A stretch of 59,513 nucleotides of DNA, filler included, from Platydemus manokwari (lineage: Eukaryota), in NCBI GenBank assembly GCA_037951405.1. It is 6 parts of 6 records of this genome, joined end to end, with 100 filler letters (N's around TTAATTAATTAA, not from the genome) between each part and the next. Parts side by side here need not be neighbours in the genome. Positions count along the whole stretch, not along the records: positions 39,745 to 48,802 come from JBBMOY011306206.1; 5 more parts are not named here. One strand, written 5' to 3'. Position 1 is the stretch's first letter; the number at the start of each line of letters is the position of its first letter. Under the pieces are notes generated by a model. It was not told the DNA's origin and did not search any database. It saw nothing but the letters and a program-made list of their open reading frames with translations. The translations under genes were made by a program, and so were the position numbers. Shown in pieces: positions 39,745-48,802 of this stretch.

Positions 39745-40343
39745 AATATTAATACTAATAAAGACAGTTATGAAAAAGATTTTATGAACGTATCGTCTCC
39801 ATAATATTGTAAGAATATCTTGGAAACTAATGATCGGGTGTATACCATTTTTAGCCTAATTTTTTATTATAAATCATCAATACAAAACAATGATAGTTAT
39901 AAAATCCGAGATACGCAATAGACGAAAAGTCAGATTTTGGAATATATCGGCTAGCAGCAGTCACACAGAAAATGATGATGAAAAATTTAATTCAGTAAAT
40001 AGTGATAATGAGAAATCACATTCTACAATCTCATTAGTAGATTGGGATAAATACAAAATAAAAACAACACAGAATTACACCAAAAAAACACTGCACCATC
40101 AGATTTATTTATGCCATCAACCTTCACACCACCATCTTTTTACCCGATAAAAAATTTGACGAAATGAAACCTATAATAATAGATAATAAGCAAAAAATTC
40201 CAAATCCAAGAAGTCAGCAGCACTGAGCGGGAAAATGAAAGAGGCAATGAAAATGCTCTGCCAAGTTCTCACATCTTCATGACAATATCACGACCGGGTA
40301 GAACACCAACTTCAAAATAAAATTAAATAAATAAAACGATAAT

Positions 40344-43300
40344 CCCATAATAGATTCCGGATCTATTGTTACAATTATATCAGAAACATTACTAATCAAG
40401 AAAGAGAAAAGTCAAATGGACTTATATGAAGAGTCAAAGTCGTTATCAGGTCATAACTTAACAATAGTAGGTTGCACTACAGTAAAATTAGAAATTTCAG
40501 AAAAAGATACTCTCAATAAGTACTAGTCATGAAAGATATCCTGTTTTATGTCTGTTAGAAATGGATGTTTTGGAACAACTAGAAGGAATAATTATGGATC
40601 TGCGTACAGGTAATATTTTACAATTGGAAACAGGTAAGGTAGCACATAAAGCCAAAGAAGTTTTTATAAATCAAATTGTTACTATTCCAGCTAGATCTGA
40701 AATTGAATGTTATGCCGACACTTGGAACCAATACGGTAGTGACTTATTGTTTGAACCAAATCCAAAATTTGTTGAGCAATATCAAATGCCATTATGCTAT
40801 GGAATTGTTCAATCTGAAAACAATACTGCTCCTTTATGATTGGTAAATTTCAATGAAAAATCGGTCACTTTAAAACATGATACAAAACTAGGGATTCTAA
40901 CCATAATCATAGAATCAGAAAACTAGACGTCACCTGAAATTCAAAATACAAAATATGGTGAAATAATAATAGACAGTAAAATTTTAACCATTCCACTAAA
41001 ACATACTTTATTCAACTTACAGAAGAAATATTCTGGGTTGATAGCCTAATATGAATTCGATGTCGAAAGTACACACGTAGTTGAACACAAAATACCACTA
41101 TTACCAGGATATAGTAGTCCTATTAAATTAAGGCCATATAGAATTCCCTATGCATATCAAAATGAAAGCAAATGTCAGAAGGACGAAATGGAATTATAAG
41201 ATATAGCTTTTTACCCTAGGGTTTCCTTGTGGTCCTGATTAAAAAAAGGAGGGTACTCTGAGATGATGTGTCGACTATAGAAAAATGAACGCTATCACAC
41301 GAAAAGATAATTAGGCTCTTCCTTTTTGCTCAGGCAATTTACGACAAAATGGTAAAATCGGAAATATTTTCGAAATTTTATCTCAATAAAGGGTACTGAC
41401 AGTTTGCAATTAAAGAGTCAGATAAATGTAAAACAGCTTTTACAAATGGAGGAGGACTAAAAGAATTCAACGTATTATCTTTTGGACTCACAGGTGCACC
41501 AGCTTTATTTCAACAAGGTATGGAATTCATTCTTATGGATGTATCTCATGCAATGATGTATATAAACGATATAATTATATTCTCTGAAACTTTTGAACAA
41601 CATTTAAGAGATATTAAAGAAGTATTGAAACGACTGAAAATGGTCAATCTATAATTAAGAACATCCAAATGCAAATGGAGGAAATCGGAAGTAATTTATA
41701 TCGGTCATGTTATTTCAAAAGATAGACTGAGACCAAATCCAGCTAGAGTAGAAAAAGTCATAAATTTCCCAATACCAAATAATGTCGATGATGTTCGAGG
41801 AATTTTAGGATTAGTGGGATATTATAGAAAGTTTATAAAAAATTTCTCACGTGAAGCTCATCCACTGAATGTATTACTGAAGAAAAATAGTAAATTTTAC
41901 TGGAAGTAGCAGCAGCAAGAAGCATTTGAAATTCTGAAAAATAAATTGATTAATAAATCGATATTGAGACACCCAGATAGTAGCATACGCAAGTAGAGCG
42001 CTGAAGAAACACGGGAAGAACTATGCTATTGTATATGCTGTCGAATATTTCAAACACTATTTGATAGAAAGAAAAATAATATTATATACCGATCACAGTC
42101 TATTACAGTGGTTGATGACGAGTAGAGACACTACTAGAAAATTGATATCTACAAGAATATAACATTGAAATCAGGTACCACTAAGGAAATGCAAATGCGG
42201 ATATATTATCTAGAATAAAAAAAATTTCTGAACAAACTTTAAGAAATGAGATAAGAGGAGACAACACAGTGTTTACTCACAAAATCGGAACTATGGCCAA
42301 CATTCAGAAAAATCAAGAAGATCATGATGAAATACGAAAAATACAACAGACACTGGAAGCACAAAAGTTTCTTATCAAACCAACAGAGATAAAAACACAT
42401 GATTATATTTTCCAAGATGGAATATTTAAATACTACAATGGTCAAAAAATTACATTAGTAGTACCTAAGAAGCATCGAGAAACTTTACTAATGCAATATT
42501 ACGATCGCGCATTGGGCGGTCATCTTTCAGGCAGAAAAATATTATCAAGATTGAGAACTAAATATCACTGGGATACAATTGAATTCGATACAAAATACTG
42601 GTGCAGAACTTGCAAAATTTGTATGACGAGAAGAAACACGGGTAAACACATGAAGGTACCTTTAAAGCCAATAACAGCACTACCATCATCAATGGAATTT
42701 ACAGCAATGGAAATAATATGTCCATTTCCAGAAACCTCAAGTGGAAACAAATATATACTTGTCTTCAATGACTATCTAACAAAATGGCCTGAGTCAATTG
42801 CAATTAAAGATCAACAAGCTGAAACAATCGCACAAGTTTTTATAGAAAATATTATTTTCCGGTTTGGAAAACCAAAGAAAACACCCACAGATCAAAGAAG
42901 AAACTTCATGAGTTTAATTTTTAAATCAATTTTCAGAATTATTCGGAATTTTAAAGTTAAATACGTCTCCTTATCATCCACAAATAGGCGGGTTAGTGGA
43001 AAGATTCAATGGGACATTTATAAATATGTTATCATCCTACACTAGAAATCAAAGAGATTGGGATTTGTATATTAGTCCATGTCTATATGCGTATCGTAAC
43101 GCCGTCCATAAAGGTACCGCAGAGGCTCCATTTTATCTTATGCATTTGAGAAGAAACAATATGTCAATTGATCTAAATTTTCAAGCGATGCAATCTCAAT
43201 ATATGAAAGTGACCGATTATAAAACGCTCATGCAAAGAGAGACTTCAATCAGCATGGCATAAAGCAAGATTAACAAATAAAATATCAACAAGAACAATAT

Positions 43301-43500
43301 AAAATGTCATACGATAAAAATGCATTTGAGCAAGGAATAAAAGTAGGAGACCTCGTCTATTTAAATTGACCAGAACCCAAAAATGACATGTCCCCAAAAT
43401 TCCAACGACCATTTAAAGGACCTTATAGGGTTACCGTAACCACTACAACGAATTTAAAATTGAAGCTAAATGCTAGGAAAAACTCTGAAACAATTATGCT
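40344..43500 (+). pseudogene. pol: Gypsy pol (protease, RT, RNase H, integrase), disrupted
   Basis: IIDSGSIVTIISE (DSG at 40353), PIKLRPYRIP, CVDYRKMN, YINDIII (YxDD decayed), GLVGYYRKFI, GGHL..CRTCKIC zinc-binding region, DYLTKWPE, TDQ, VERFNGT, FKGPYRV. Confidence 0.92.
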
Positions 43501-44900
43501 AATAGATATAAAAAGGTTCAAAATCAAGAAAAATTATGTTATGAATTGAGATCAAAAATAAAAGAAAAGGATATAACAAGTGATAACATCAATCACAACA
43601 ATAAATATCACAAAAATAAACTAAATAATATATTTACAGTTTTAAGCATTGTAAGCTTATTTAAAATTGCAGAAATGGTTATGGAACGCGCCCTAATCGA
43701 GTTCAACTTAATTAAAGAGTTGACTATATATTCATCGTACACTACAATAATGCGAATTTGCGACTGTCGAGATTTTAGAACTTCACGTATTTGGAGTATA
43801 GAATCTAACAATCTTACAGAAGAATTTACGTTTGACGATAACAATAATAAAACAATTATAAGAAATTTAAAAACAAACAAGAGATATATGTGGGGAATAG
43901 CATATTGGAATAGCTCTTTATACGACTACAATTGGGCAGACATATTCATAAAATTACACATATGGACAAAAGATATTAAAAATAAAATCGAAATTGAACC
44001 AAAATTTAAGGGGGTTATTCTGAAATGGAAACCTCGATCGAAAATGAAAGCCAACATTTTCATAAAAAGAGATCGGTGGAACTATACGGAAGAAATGGAT
44101 CATCAAAATAGGTTCATAAAATGCGAAAACCTTAAGTTAAACAGGAAATATATAATCAAGATAATATATTACGAACTTAAATTACGAGATGATTGGAAAT
44201 GCGAAGTAGATAAATGGGTAAAAATATTGCTTGGAAGAGCGACATCTAAAACGGAAAATCAAAGACATCAAAATACTAATTACTACAAAATCAAAATACG
44301 AAGACCTGCGGAACCCAAGGAAAAAGCAGTCATCACTCTAAGCTTTATGGATTTAGCAAAAAACTCTACCATTGAATGTATCTACAGGTTTATTTACGAA
44401 CCTGCTGCGAGATGAGCAATATCAATTAAAGGCGGAGTATTGGAAAGAAATAGCGGGAATATAGACACTTATACTTGTGGAATACATTTCAATTCAAATT
44501 AAACCCCAAAACCATACAGAAGAATATTTAACCATTAATAATTACTATTATAAATTTAATAATAATATTTCAGAATCTAGAAGAACAATACCTTCAACTG
44601 GTTTCAATCAATCATGACAACTTAATTCTGAGGAAAATTTCCAATCGATTTCACGGAATTTCGATTACGCTGGTCTAATAATCATAATTTCGCTATATAT
44701 AACATCTTTACTGATCACTGCTTTGACTATCAAATCATCATTTAATCAAACTCGGAAGATCCACATCCCAAATCGGGCATTGATTTTATTAACTTCAGTC
44801 TGAATAAACATTGATGAACTCTGCGCATGCCTTTTAGCTAAAATATATGTGTAATCTATATTTATAACTATAGCTATATCTACATTTTCATTGGTTAATT
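43501..44900 (+). pseudogene. Env-position module: hydrophobic leader, FN3-like repeats, transmembrane segments
   Basis: In frame with the pol-like tail NRYKKV..YELRSK. Contains IFTVLSIVSLF, TIIRNLKTNKRY and VILKWKP...ENLKLNRKYIIKI; after a frameshift, AGLIIIISLYITSLLITALTI at 44669-44731. Confidence 0.5.
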
Positions 44901-45470
44901 TAAACAAAATAATAATTAATCAATCAATTGTAAAACCAAAGGCTAATGGTCAACCAGTATAAAGAAGGGTATAAATTGGTCATCGAAGAGTGAAAAAATT
45001 CTGCCTAAACTGATCCGAAGTCTGAACTGACAAGGATTCAATAAAAGAAGTATATTTCATTCAATCCAAGTCAATCAATTCAATCAAAAGCATGAAAAAA
45101 ATCAGCAGAACAAAACAATTGTGCCGTAATATCAAGAAAATCCCAAGAAAAACAAATCAATTTCCAATAGTAAGCTTTATTTCCAACTCCGAAGTGCCAA
45201 ATTATCTTCGATCGACAGACTGGGAAATGGGATTTTGGATTACAGAGGTTCCTAAAGAAAAGAAAATGTGGTTATACGAATTGAGAGAAGAAGAACCAAT
45301 TGGAATCTGGGAACTATGTGCGGTAGTTGCAGAACTCCAAGTCGAAAATGTGACTGGATAAAAATTATTCGTAATGTCAAGCGAAGCATCGTGGAATACT
45401 TCACAAGAAGATTGGACCAAAACAACGAAACTCCTTCCTCAGAAAACACCACAGTCTAGAGAAAATTAGA

Positions 45471-45970
45471 GAAAATCTCATTTTCATTGATGCCGAATTC
45501 AAGACAAAGAATTTGGATAACAAAATATCCCCAGTGTCCGTTACGATCTTCAATTAAGAAGGAAAGGTCCTGCTTGATACGAAAGTAAACCCACATGGTA
45601 GGGCTTTCGAATTCGGGAATAATATTCACGGAATCACTGAATTCGAAACCTGAGGAAAAATGAACGAATATGAATGTATTAGAAAAATCCAAGAAATAGT
45701 CAGAAACAAAATACCGGTCGGGCATGATCTAAATATGGAAATATTTCATCTCTCAATAAAAGTGAATCAACTCTTAGGCATTCGGGATCTATGCAACGCA
45801 CCAGTATTATTTGATATGGGAATACCGCGTAGGAATTCTAGATCATATTTTTCACTAAAGATAGTCGCAAAAACATTATGCGGAATAGACATACAACAAC
45901 CAAGCCAGGACAATTCATTGAAAGATAGATAGAAAGAAACGGTGCGAAATATATCAAAAAATTGAGAAAA
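45471..45970 (+). pseudogene. REX4/ISG20-like DEDDh 3'-5' exonuclease domain inside the Gypsy element
   Basis: One frame reads LIFIDAEF..PVSVTIFN*EGKVLLDTKVNP..IHGITE..*..IQEIVRNKIPVGHDLNME..IRDL..FSLKIVAKTLCGIDIQQ..NSLKD, with stops at 45555 and 45651. Confidence 0.78.
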
Positions 45971-46701
45971 ACTAGAGAGATCACCACTACATAAAACCAC
46001 AGGAGAAGGCCAAAATCTTTATTGAAGAATATCGAAAAAGGAAGAGTAGCGAAGATCAAATAATAAGATAAAAGAAATAATAAGATAAAAATAGTTTTTG
46101 GCTATTTCAAAATCCGAATTCCGCAGGAGAAAACATCACAAGATCTGCGTCCACAACTATCAAGCAACAGAAGAGATCAAATAGATTTAACGAAGGATCT
46201 TGAAGAGGAACCTACTGAAACTTGGGATTTATCAGCACAGTGCACAATCGAGGAAACTGAAGAAGCCACATATGATTCCAAAATGGAAATATCGAAGGTA
46301 AGTGAAGATAATCGACAATCAAAGAAAAGCTGAGAAAAGCACACATGCAGATCATGTAAAATCATCTTCAAGCAAGAATGTTAGAAAATGTAATTCGAAT
46401 GGAAGATCAAACGTGCAAAATCCTGAAGACTGTCACCAAAATAGCCTTTCAAAAACCAAATGGCGAAATTGGAATTCTAAAGTTTAATAATTGAATAAAT
46501 GTATTAAAAAATCTTTTGAATGTTTAAAATTTATATATCATCATATATAATTATGTAACTTAATAGAATTACGCAATTACAAAAAATGAGAAATAATTCA
46601 AATTCATAAAAATATTTACTAACCAAATTGATAAATTAAATCCAAATAAAAAAAGCATATTGAATAATATTAACATCAAATTTTGAGGACAAAATTTATC
46701 T

Positions 46702-46715
46702 AAAATGGGGAGATA
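46702..46715 (+). other. Polypurine tract
   Basis: aaaatggggagata immediately before TGT, preceded by a gaggac motif typical of Gypsy 3' ends. Confidence 0.7.
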
Positions 46716-47438
46716 TGTTAAGTAGTCAAGATACAATGAATAAATAAACTACCTTTTGTTGAGAATTTGGTCCTATCTCGGTTTAGAGTTATATAGGACA
46801 ATCTCTCGGAGGTTTCAAGAACGATAGCTATAATTATGATGATGGTAGTTTAATTATACGAATAGTGTCCTATTTCGGCTTTCCATGGGCCTCATCAGTG
46901 TCTTAGACCAGAGACAGATAAGACTAAAATAAATCTAGAAAATAACTATCTGCTATATAATAATTTTGAGACCAATTCATCAAGTAACCCAAAACCCAGG
47001 GTTATTGTATTATGGCTAAAAATCCTCGCAGAATCGGACTGAATTTTAAAACGCTGACAGGCAATAAATTTGGACGCATAAATCCCGTCAGAGAATGAAA
47101 ATCCAATTCATATTGGAATCCAGATTGAGCTACGTGTATGATGGATGATCGTAGCTCAATCTGATAATTAATTAAAACATAATTATTATACCAGAATTAA
47201 TTATAATTAATTATATAAAGAACATATTATCAACAAGTATAAATAATCGAAAAATATACAAAATTACACAAAAATAAAATTTCTGTTCAAATTTAAAAAT
47301 TTATGATGAAGTATGTTAACGATATTTTATTGTCATGTTTTAGGGTATTTTAAATAATTTGTTTTAATTGAATAAACATTATTGTTTTCATTTTATTTTA
47401 ATTCTGTATTTCTATTTTAAATATTGGCTTATATAACA
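46716..47438 (+). repeat. Putative 3' LTR (about 723 bp)
   Basis: Starts TGTTA right after the PPT, AATAAA near 47372, ends TAACA. Cannot be confirmed as a direct repeat because the 5' LTR is absent. Confidence 0.6.
46867..46924 (-). ncRNA. Type III hammerhead ribozyme
   Basis: Minus strand GUCUUA-UC^-UGUCU-cuggucua-AGACA-CUGAUGA-GGC-ccauggaaa-GCC-GAAA-UAGGAC. Full conserved core, stems I, II and III all pair, AUC cleavage triplet (cut between 46917 and 46916). Confidence 0.9.
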
Positions 47439-48802
47439 TTAACCGGTGTGTATCGACTCTTTCAAGCTTGTTCTCATCGTTTCTGTAGTTATTTTGGTTG
47501 GTTTTGTCACGTACTCCGCATATCATATTCCCATTGCAATCTTAACTGTTTCGATTGTTTAAAAGATGTTATTTTAAATGGCTAAAACTTTCTAAATGTT
47601 TACATATTGAACTCATTCTATTAGTTATTAGCACTAGTTATTAACAAAAATCTTCACTCATTGTAACTCAACACTTATTAGAATTTTAAAATAATTTTTA
47701 TTTCTCATATTGTATTGGAAACATGTTAGGTTAAATATTAGTCTCCTTAATCACAAATGTACAATGATCTTAATGAAGAAGGATATATTTTATTTAAAAA
47801 ATTTTCATAATCATAGAAATAGTTGAAGAAACCAAAAGATTAATATAATAAAATTAGTAGGATAGAGCTATTAATAAAATTTAAAAATTATAAAAGTACA
47901 ACAAAATCCCAACTTTAATCAGTCAGCATATTCAACAACTACTTGAACTCAAATTACTGAATTACATTATTTTTTAAAAATATATTTTTTAAATAAGCTG
48001 TTGAATGATACCACATCATCATTTATTTTAACAATAATTTTTGTATCAAATTTAAGCAACCATTTTGTACATTTAAAAGAATTCGATTCAATTCCATCAA
48101 TTCTTACAACAAAGAATATTATAGAAATGTAAAACAACCATATTTATCAAAAACTCATTTACATAAATCTCAGAGAATTTACAAATAATGTAGGCGGAAA
48201 TCAGAACTGTAGTTTTATTTAACTTTTAATCAAAATAAATACTATTTAGTGGGTGGAAGAATTTAATTATTTATAATTAAGAAAAATAAAAATAACCGGT
48301 ACTTTATAAGTAAAAACATAATATGATCTTAAATTCACTTATTTATAAATAAAAACAATAAATACGTGTGTGGGTGGTAAAATAAATTTTGTGATTTGTA
48401 TATTTACAATTACGATTTAATATTTCTATACTTAGAACAGAAACAACTGTTTAATTATGCTTGTGTATCCCAAGAAAATTTTGCAGATAAAAGAAATAAC
48501 ATCTTGTTAGTGAGATGAATTTTTGACAATTTAAAAGAAAATTTTTAAATGAAAGTGGTTTTAATCAAAAGAAACTAAATATACTAAATATAAGAGAAGC
48601 AATTTTAATTTTACAATATAATTTATTCATGGAATTCAAATTTACCACATATACTTAAAGTCATAAAAAATATATTTTATTTTATTGAGTATTACGTGAA
48701 ACAAATCATATAAGACTATATATATATACAGTGTAATAAAATTAAAGTTGACTTTGAATTGCAAATCAAAGAGAAAAAATTTTATAATCGGGTATAGCTA
48801 TG

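What the first reader, a model, noticed from the sequence alone, without database searches (positions are those of the whole stretch)
46867..46924. Intact antisense type III hammerhead ribozyme about 150 nt inside the putative LTR
Seen: every core nucleotide (CUGAUGA, G10.1-C11.1, GAAA, UC) is present. Stem I is 5 bp, stem II 3 bp and stem III 7 bp with one G-U; loop 1 UGG can pair with loop 2 CCA, like the tertiary contact of natural hammerheads. It remains perfect although pol is riddled with mutations, and it is antisense to pol. Inference: one copy per LTR would cut antisense transcripts into a unit-length, circularisable RNA, or truncate antisense read-through that feeds dsRNA/piRNA silencing.
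Basis: partly seen in the sequence, partly recalled or inferred. Interest (0 to 1): 0.9.

Follow-up and report, generated by a model that had tools for sequence, protein, structure and literature searches.

The report
Lone antisense hammerhead motif in retrotransposon LTR
A complete hammerhead self-cleaving RNA motif sits on the antisense strand of what looks like the end-repeat of a decayed retrovirus-like element, but it is a single copy, absent from the nearest relatives, so whether it works or matters is unproven.

Summary
The minus strand 46924..46867 spells a full type III hammerhead. It has CUGAUGA, GAAA, G10.1-C11.1, A15.1-U16.1 and C17. The stems are 5, 3 and 7 bp, and the cut site lies between 46917 and 46916. 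My own descriptor finds only this hit in the piece. It found 3 minimal hits, and none as good, in 255 Mb of composition-matched random sequence, which is about 2e-4 expected per piece.

There are clear weaknesses:
- Rfam Hammerhead_3 gives only 20 bits, against a gathering score of 48.5.
- Stem II is 3 bp closing a 9-nt loop.
- The cleavage triplet is AUC rather than the usual GUC.
- A competing fold is predicted to be 5 kcal/mol more stable.

The context also holds. The motif lies 151 nt inside a plausible 3' LTR of a frame-broken Ty3/gypsy-like element. That element has an extra exonuclease ORF and belongs to a clade seen in metagenome assemblies; bdelloid-rotifer Vesta/Juno elements carry extra ORFs of this sort.

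Twelve relatives (about 44% pol identity, 197 kb) have no hammerhead, and three of them have recognisable LTR pairs. No close copy could be found, so conservation and covariation are untested.

Verdict: probably a genuine hammerhead sequence (about 0.5-0.6).

The parts
46867..46924 (-). Complete type III hammerhead motif. Stem III 5' strand 46924-46918; C17 46917 (cut between 46917 and 46916); stem I 46916-46912 and 46903-46899; loop 1 46911-46904; CUGAUGA 46898-46892; stem II 46891-46889 and 46879-46877; loop 2 46888-46880; GAA 46876-46874; stem III 3' strand 46873-46867.
   Evidence: sequence and descriptor; RF00008, 20 bits; chance rate.
46702..46713 (+). Purine-rich tract AAAATGGGGAGA, two bases before TGTT. 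Putative polypurine tract at the start of the 3' LTR.
   Evidence: read directly. Inferred function.
46716..47179 (+). Putative 3' LTR (TGTT...AACA). It has TATATAA at 46954-46960 and AATAAA at 47063-47068 on the + strand, so the hammerhead would lie in U3. The end is placed where G+C drops from 0.32 to about 0.22. Boundaries are inferred because the piece has no 5' LTR.
   Evidence: The relative L024 has an LTR of about 430 nt ending ...AACA, followed by a TGG primer-binding site.
47121..47163 (.). Perfect 14-bp hairpin (arms 47121-47134 and 47150-47163) near the putative LTR end.
   Evidence: I9.
40335..43525 (+). Degenerate Ty3/gypsy-type pol (protease, RT, RNase H, integrase), broken by at least 7 frame changes and by in-frame stops.
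   Evidence: Integrase_H2C2, rve; (tblastn with relatives' polyproteins).
43489..44412 (+). 308-codon open frame after integrase with no detectable homologue.
45408..45926 (+). Remnant of the clade's extra exonuclease ORF (RNase_T-type in relatives), interrupted by an in-frame stop.
   Evidence: 38% over 52 aa, E 6e-10; 9 relatives, E 1e-7 to 2e-20; Pfam RNase_T in relatives.

Best explanation
A genuine type III hammerhead sequence lies on the antisense strand in the U3 part of the 3' LTR of a dead Ty3/gypsy-like element; bdelloid-rotifer Vesta/Juno elements carry extra ORFs of the same sort. Shown: the motif is complete, its topology is type III, and it is antisense to pol. Inferred: if an RNA is made from the minus strand across the LTR, by an antisense LTR promoter or by read-through from flanking DNA, the motif would cut it between 46917 and 46916. 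That would leave a 2',3'-cyclic phosphate on the upstream piece and a 5'-OH on the downstream piece, which would run antisense into the element. The most likely origin is a lineage-specific acquisition in U3, the LTR part most tolerant of inserted sequence, and not an ancestral feature of the clade. Whether it ever served the element is open. In this decayed copy it is most likely a relic.
For: All invariant core positions and the three helices are present. The chance expectation is about 2e-4 per piece for any hammerhead type, with none as good in 255 Mb of matched random sequence. Rfam's type III model independently picks the same 50 nt as its only hammerhead hit. Another metagenomic type III hammerhead motif with perfect stems (L009) scores only 26.7 bits on the same model, so missing the gathering score may not be disqualifying. 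U7 and C17 match the positions of the Rfam consensus shown in the alignment. Stem III (7 bp) and stem I (5 bp) exceed the descriptor minimum. The LTR placement is coherent: the exonuclease ORF remnant ends upstream, and a purine tract plus TG, a TATA-like box and AATAAA all lie on the + strand.
Against: The score is 20 bits against a gathering score of 48.5. Stem II is only 3 bp closing a 9-nt loop, worth -1.3 kcal/mol on its own. The 15.2-16.2 pair is U-A (AUC site), where the Rfam consensus has C-G. The hammerhead fold is -9.7 kcal/mol, against -14.7 for a competing fold that pairs the stem III 5' strand with the core. The competing fold also wins in the 71-nt and 464-nt contexts. There is only one copy and no second LTR. 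There is no hammerhead, and no other ribozyme hit where Rfam was run, in 12 relatives totalling 197 kb, three of which have LTR pairs. No close copy exists in any collection searched, so conservation and covariation are untested. The scan's total search space is unknown, so a one-off chance hit across the whole campaign cannot be excluded.
Confidence: 0.5

Rival explanations
1. Fortuitous motif: an AT-rich LTR happens to spell the hammerhead consensus. It was never selected and is probably a poor or inactive ribozyme.
For: It is a single occurrence and is absent from all relatives. It falls below the Rfam gathering score, with E 2.3 for the piece against all families. Stem II is minimal, the triplet is the non-consensus AUC, and a competing fold is more stable. 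The loop-loop UGG/CCA match is at chance level (my arithmetic). Random sequence does give minimal hammerhead hits, at about 1.2e-8 per nt. Over a very large scan, that means a few would turn up.
Against: No random hit had stems this long in 255 Mb. For this piece the expectation is 2e-4 or less. The optional positions U7 and C17 agree with the Rfam consensus.
Confidence: 0.35
2. One reading: the hammerhead is a working part of the element, one per LTR. It either trims antisense transcripts to a unit-length circularisable RNA or cuts antisense read-through to blunt dsRNA/piRNA silencing.
For: The motif is complete and lies in an LTR, so a full element would carry two copies in the same orientation. 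Plant retrozymes show that LTR-borne type III hammerheads can yield circular RNAs (PMC4918200). In the bdelloid rotifer Adineta vaga, transposons are targeted mostly by antisense small RNAs (PMC5408684); that the window's host is comparable is my conjecture.
Against: Nothing here shows antisense transcription, cleavage or circles. The unit would be over 10 kb, against 600-1000 nt for retrozymes. Relatives with intact genes and LTR pairs have no hammerhead, so it is not needed for this kind of element. The survival of the motif in a decayed copy is expected without selection (plus my arithmetic).
Confidence: 0.1
3. The 'LTR' is a solo LTR or fragment of a separate hammerhead-bearing non-autonomous element (retrozyme-like) lying in minus orientation next to the dead gypsy element. 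The hammerhead would then be sense to its own element.
For: Known LTR-borne type III hammerheads are sense to non-autonomous retrozymes. LTR termini (TG...CA) read the same on both strands. The putative LTR folds unusually well on the minus strand, z -4.25.
Against: The purine tract directly before TG, the TATA-like box and AATAAA all fit the + orientation. No TGG-type primer-binding site follows the repeat on the minus strand. There is no second hammerhead within the piece. The spacing after the exonuclease ORF is as in relatives.
Confidence: 0.05

Closest known systems
Plant LTR retrozymes (type III hammerhead inside each LTR; PMC4918200, PMC7761336)
   Same: A type III hammerhead embedded in an LTR of a Ty3/gypsy-related retroelement, so two copies would bracket a unit in a full element.
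   Different: Retrozymes are non-coding, non-autonomous and 600-1000 nt between ribozymes. They are GC-rich (over 55%) and found in plants, and the ribozyme is sense to the element. Here the element codes for pol and extra ORFs, is about 30% G+C and over 10 kb, its closest kin come from metagenome assemblies of unknown eukaryotic hosts, and the ribozyme is antisense.
Hammerhead_3, Rfam RF00008 (viroid, satellite and plant type III hammerheads)
   Same: Same core and same topology. The model aligns to 46920-46871.
   Different: The score is 20 bits, below the gathering score of 48.5. There are an AUC site with a U-A 15.2-16.2 pair, longer loops and a 3-bp stem II.
Minimal type I hammerheads of Penelope-like elements and Terminons (PMC4209133, PMC7761336)
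   Same: Hammerheads carried in the terminal repeats of autonomous retroelements of invertebrates, including rotifers. Their role is also unknown.
   Different: Those are type I with a vestigial helix III, occur in tandem, and sit in a different retroelement class. This one is type III with a 7-bp helix III, in an LTR element.
Bdelloid-rotifer Vesta/Juno LTR retrotransposons with extra ORF3 (env-like, DEDDy exonuclease; PMC5408684)
   Same: A gypsy-like pol followed by additional ORFs, including a 3'-5' exonuclease. Relatives also carry a fusion glycoprotein domain of negative-strand RNA viruses.
   Different: Membership was not tested by phylogeny. Pfam calls the relatives' domain RNase_T, where the paper describes an RNase D-like DEDDy type. 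The paper's text does not mention hammerheads or ribozymes.

Membership tests
Hammerhead ribozyme, type III | Invariant core: C3 U4 G5 A6 N7 G8 A9, G12 A13 A14, A15.1-U16.1, H17, and a 10.1-11.1 pair | tested here: met
   CUGAUGA, GAA, A-U, C17 and G-C are all present.
Hammerhead ribozyme, type III | Three helices around the core, with helices I and II closed by loops and helix III open | tested here: met
   5, 3 and 7 bp, with loops of 8 and 9 nt.
Hammerhead ribozyme, type III | Reaches the Rfam RF00008 gathering score | tested here: not met
   20 bits against 48.5. Another type III motif from a metagenome also scores only 26.7 bits.
Hammerhead ribozyme, type III | The hammerhead fold is thermodynamically accessible | tested here: inconclusive
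   hammerhead fold -9.7 kcal/mol against -14.7 for a competing fold. Tertiary contacts are not modelled.
Hammerhead ribozyme, type III | Conservation and covariation of the stems among homologous copies | not testable with these tools
   No alignable copy was found. Distant relatives lack the motif.
Hammerhead ribozyme, type III | Site-specific self-cleavage | not testable with these tools
   Needs in vitro transcription.
LTR retrozyme | Type III hammerhead inside an LTR | tested here: inconclusive
   The LTR is inferred from the purine tract, TG...CA ends and the composition break. There is no second LTR in the piece.
LTR retrozyme | Ribozyme sense to the element (PBS to PPT direction) | tested here: not met
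   The motif is on the minus strand. Pol, the purine tract, TATA and AATAAA are on the plus strand.
LTR retrozyme | Non-coding, non-autonomous, a few hundred nt between LTRs | tested here: not met
   The element carries pol, an extra ORF and an exonuclease ORF remnant.
Penelope-like-element hammerhead | Type I topology with a minimal helix III, in tandem | tested here: not met
   type III, helix III of 7 bp, single copy.
Ty3/gypsy-like LTR retrotransposon with extra exonuclease ORF | PR-RT-RH-IN order, followed by an exonuclease ORF before the 3' LTR | tested here: met
.

The most novel reading that the evidence does not exclude
An autonomous, envelope-bearing LTR retroelement lineage of a microscopic eukaryote carries a working type III hammerhead on the antisense strand of U3. 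Every antisense or read-through transcript entering the element would then be severed from its cap at the LTR. This would be a ribozyme used by a retroelement against antisense-RNA-based silencing, or as an insulator, and it would be the first type III hammerhead tied to an autonomous LTR element outside plants.
Probability: 0.1. Interest if true: 0.8.

Novelty: new variant of a known kind. Interest (0 to 1): 0.45.

Why it matters
The papers I read place hammerheads in non-autonomous plant retrozymes (sense, type III), animal tandem retrozymes and Penelope-like elements (type I). None of them reports one in the LTR of a protein-coding gypsy-like element, or in antisense orientation, though that reading was not exhaustive. 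If the motif is active and kept among copies, it would extend ribozyme use to autonomous LTR elements. It would also give a directly testable link between self-cleaving RNA and the control of antisense transcripts. If it is a one-off, it is a useful calibration point. A perfect consensus hammerhead can stand alone in a dead element, and the Rfam gathering score would have missed it either way.

Tried and rejected
- **Rfam at gathering threshold:** no hit. Only the permissive mode shows the motif.
- **Second hammerhead or other ribozyme in the piece:** none.
- **Second LTR in the piece:** none.
- **Copies by protein:**
  - the 308-aa ORF has no homologue;
  - integrase hits were at most 42% identical among proteins of similar length, and 47-59% over the matched stretch for the closest representatives;
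  - ranking 269 fetched proteins against the window gave at most about 44% mean identity.
- **Copies by DNA:**
  - the purine-tract/LTR-start 22-mer gave 0 hits in JGI metagenomes;
  - a hammerhead pattern in metagenomes gave 8 unrelated loci;
  - in IMG/VR it gave 4 phage type I hammerheads;
  - the exact 26-mer gave 0 hits in GTDB genomes;
  - protein-seeded scans of IMG/VR and GTDB genomes gave 0 hits.
- **LTR similarity to relatives:** blastn found none. Only RT and IN align, at about 66%.
- **Core-box pair on the minus strand of L018 (9630-9681):** it lies inside the exonuclease ORF and has no stems, so I rejected it as chance.
- **22-nt direct repeat 46763-46784 / 46860-46881 (77%):** this hinted at a duplicated, deleted second ribozyme. 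The alignment shows nothing beyond the short match, and about 3 such matches are expected in 1 kb (my arithmetic), so I rejected it.
- **Weak MIR845_1 hit on the 47121-47163 hairpin** (19.8 bits against 81): noise.
- **Bacterial promoter/terminator scan:** at shuffle level and not relevant to a eukaryotic element.

Full report
**1. The observation**

Read on the minus strand, 46924..46867 is GUCUUAU C UGUCU CUGGUCUA AGACA CUGAUGA GGC CCAUGGAAA GCC GAA AUAGGAC. This is a type III hammerhead layout.
- Helix III is open and 7 bp long, counting A15.1-U16.1 and one U-G pair.
- C17 is at 46917, so the cut falls between 46917 and 46916.
- Helix I is 5 bp closed by an 8-nt loop.
- The CUGAUGA box is intact.
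- Helix II is 3 bp, starting with G10.1-C11.1, and is closed by a 9-nt loop.
- GAA is present.

**2. Is it more than chance?**

I wrote a descriptor for the three hammerhead topologies. It requires the core as above, H17, helix I of at least 4 bp, helix II of at least 3 bp, helix III of at least 3-4 bp, and loops of 3-20 nt.
- On both strands of 39745-48802 it returns this one hit only.
- It also recovers phage type I and type II hammerheads in fetched IMG/VR loci, which serves as a positive control.
- In 255 Mb of first-order Markov sequence trained on the piece it found 3 minimal hits, none with stems this long. That is about 2e-4 expected per piece for any hammerhead, and fewer for one this good.
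- Rfam finds nothing at the gathering threshold.
- In permissive mode Hammerhead_3 (RF00008) aligns to 46920-46871 at 20 bits, against a gathering score of 48.5. The E-value is 0.1 for 401 nt and 2.3 for the piece against all 4227 families. Dividing by the number of families gives about 5e-4 for this one family in the piece, which is close to my descriptor's estimate.
- A different type III motif from a metagenome contig (L009), with perfect stems, scores only 26.7 bits on the same model. Missing the curated threshold is therefore a weakness, not a disqualification.

**3. Weak points of the motif itself**

- Helix II is only GGC/GCC closing 9 nt, worth -1.3 kcal/mol alone.
- The 15.2-16.2 pair is U-A, giving an AUC site where the Rfam consensus has C-G and GUC.
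- The hammerhead secondary structure is worth -9.7 kcal/mol. A competing fold pairs GUCUUAUC, which is the helix III 5' strand plus C17, with GAUGAGGC, which is part of the core plus the helix II 5' strand. It is worth -14.7 kcal/mol.
- That competing fold is the predicted structure for the 58-mer, the 71-mer and the 464-nt putative LTR.
- Nearest-neighbour energies ignore the tertiary core, so this lowers the odds of efficient cleavage but does not exclude it.
- The UGG/CCA loop match is not evidence. About one complementary 3-mer is expected between loops of these sizes and this composition (my arithmetic).

**4. Context**

The plus strand carries a degenerate Ty3/gypsy-type pol.
- Pfam finds Integrase_H2C2 and rve.
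- Protease, RT, RNase H and integrase pieces lie between about 40335 and 43525.
- tblastn with relatives' polyproteins shows at least 7 frame changes plus in-frame stops.
- Downstream comes a 308-codon open frame with no homologue.
- At 45408-45926 there is the remnant of an exonuclease ORF. It matches the ORF downstream of pol in nine relatives (E 1e-7 to 2e-20; 38% over 52 aa to L005). Three of those ORFs carry Pfam RNase_T.

The element therefore runs at least to about 46480. Beyond that point:
- A purine tract lies at 46702-46713, followed by TGTT at 46716.
- TATATAA at 46954 and AATAAA at 47063 lie on the plus strand.
- ...AACA ends at 47179, where G+C falls from 0.32 to about 0.22.

These features make 46716-47179 a plausible 3' LTR. 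The hammerhead would lie in U3, 151 nt from the LTR start, and antisense.

In the relative L024 the LTR is about 430 nt. It ends ...AACA and is followed by a TGG primer-binding site, which is consistent with this reading.

The piece has no second LTR, so the LTR is inferred.

**5. Relatives**

- The integrase's best matches are 47-59% identical over the matched stretch.
- Almost all come from ENA metagenome assemblies. One comes from a MAG labelled Flavobacteriaceae.
- After a further search, the best mean identity to the window's pol among 269 fetched proteins is about 44%.
- I fetched 12 relatives' contigs, L005-L008 and L017-L024, totalling 197 kb.
- Several encode a Monjiviricetes_fusion glycoprotein domain in the polyprotein, and several encode the extra exonuclease ORF.
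- This recalls the bdelloid-rotifer Vesta/Juno LTR elements, which have env-like and DEDDy exonuclease ORF3s (PMC5408684).
- Three relatives show LTR pairs: L022, L023 and L024.
- None of the 12 has a hammerhead of any type on either strand, even with relaxed settings. Rfam's permissive mode on five of them shows no ribozyme.
- One core-box pair in L018 lies inside the exonuclease ORF without stems and is chance.
- The non-coding parts do not align with the window.

The motif is therefore not a feature of the clade. At most it is lineage-specific.

**6. Search for close copies**

None was found. I tried:
- protein searches;
- protein-seeded scans of IMG/VR and GTDB genomes;
- a purine-tract/LTR-start 22-mer in JGI metagenomes;
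- hammerhead patterns in IMG/VR, JGI metagenomes and GTDB genomes.

The pattern hits were unrelated hammerheads or non-hammerhead sequence.

**7. The 'perfect while pol decays' argument**

Seven frame changes in about 3 kb imply, at usual indel-to-substitution ratios, roughly 1-2.5% substitutions. The frame changes may also be long-read homopolymer errors. At that level, about 45 constrained positions stay intact in roughly a third to two thirds of cases (my arithmetic). This is not evidence of selection.

**8. Interpretation**

The most likely reading (about 0.5) is a genuine hammerhead sequence acquired in U3 of this lineage's LTR. It would be able to cut minus-strand transcripts at 46917/46916, and in this dead copy it is a relic.

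The main rival (about 0.35) is a fortuitous, probably feeble motif.

These models are unit-length circles and the truncation of antisense RNA to blunt silencing. The unit would be over 10 kb, unlike retrozyme circles of 600-1000 nt (PMC4918200, PMC7761336).

A retrozyme-like solo LTR in minus orientation is unlikely, given the plus-strand purine tract, TATA and AATAAA, and the lack of a TGG site on the minus strand.

**9. Comparison with what is known**

The papers read here place type III hammerheads in plant non-autonomous LTR retrozymes, sense to the element. They place type I hammerheads in animal tandem retrozymes and in Penelope-like elements and Terminons. None of them reports a hammerhead in the LTR of a coding gypsy-like element or in antisense orientation. 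If it is real, this is a new variant of a known kind.

**10. Handling**

I took nothing here for human sequence.

Noticed in passing
window 45408-45926 (+); L005 8000-9331; L018 9547-11622; L024 19559-21613: The element and at least nine relatives carry an extra ORF downstream of pol. In three relatives it has a Pfam RNase_T (DEDD-type 3'-5' exonuclease) domain. The window's copy is interrupted by an in-frame stop. It recalls the exonuclease ORF3 of bdelloid-rotifer Vesta/Juno elements (PMC5408684).
   Followed up: partly
L007, L017, L018, L020-L024 (polyprotein genes): Relatives' giant polyproteins (up to 3108 aa) contain a Monjiviricetes_fusion (PF24664) glycoprotein domain upstream of protease and RT. 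This is an envelope-like gene of negative-strand RNA virus type inside gypsy-like elements.
   Followed up: no
L021 17034-24564; L024 2334-5753; L020 (GCA_003506685.1): Some relatives are flanked by bacterial-looking genes (Bac_luciferase, MnhB, ABC_tran/MacB, TetR). One sits in a MAG labelled Flavobacteriaceae. The causes could be chimeric assembly, mis-binning, or a host rich in horizontally acquired genes.
   Followed up: no
window 47121-47163: A perfect 14-bp hairpin with a 15-nt loop lies near the putative LTR end. The whole putative LTR folds better than shuffles on both strands (z -4.25 on the minus strand, -2.9 on the plus strand).
   Followed up: partly
window 40552-43525: Pol switches reading frame at least 7 times. 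Real decay and homopolymer errors of a long-read assembly cannot be told apart here.
   Followed up: partly
L001 883-936, L002 8133-8184, L003 343-396 and 1158-1211, L004 3898-3951: IMG/VR phage contigs hold clean type I hammerheads, and L003 also holds a type II. They were picked up only because they share GACA-CUGAUGAG-GC with the window's motif, and they are unrelated to it.
   Followed up: no
L009 174-232 (-), contig JAAOEH010011025.1: A type III hammerhead with an AUA site, a 7-bp helix III and the same GAAAUAGGA segment as the window's motif. The contig is 47% G+C and otherwise dissimilar. It scores 26.7 bits on RF00008.
   Followed up: partly
L023 16872-18689: A DNA_pol_B_2 (protein-primed type B polymerase) ORF lies just past the relative's 3' LTR. 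It is possibly a neighbouring Polinton-like or linear-plasmid-like element.
   Followed up: no
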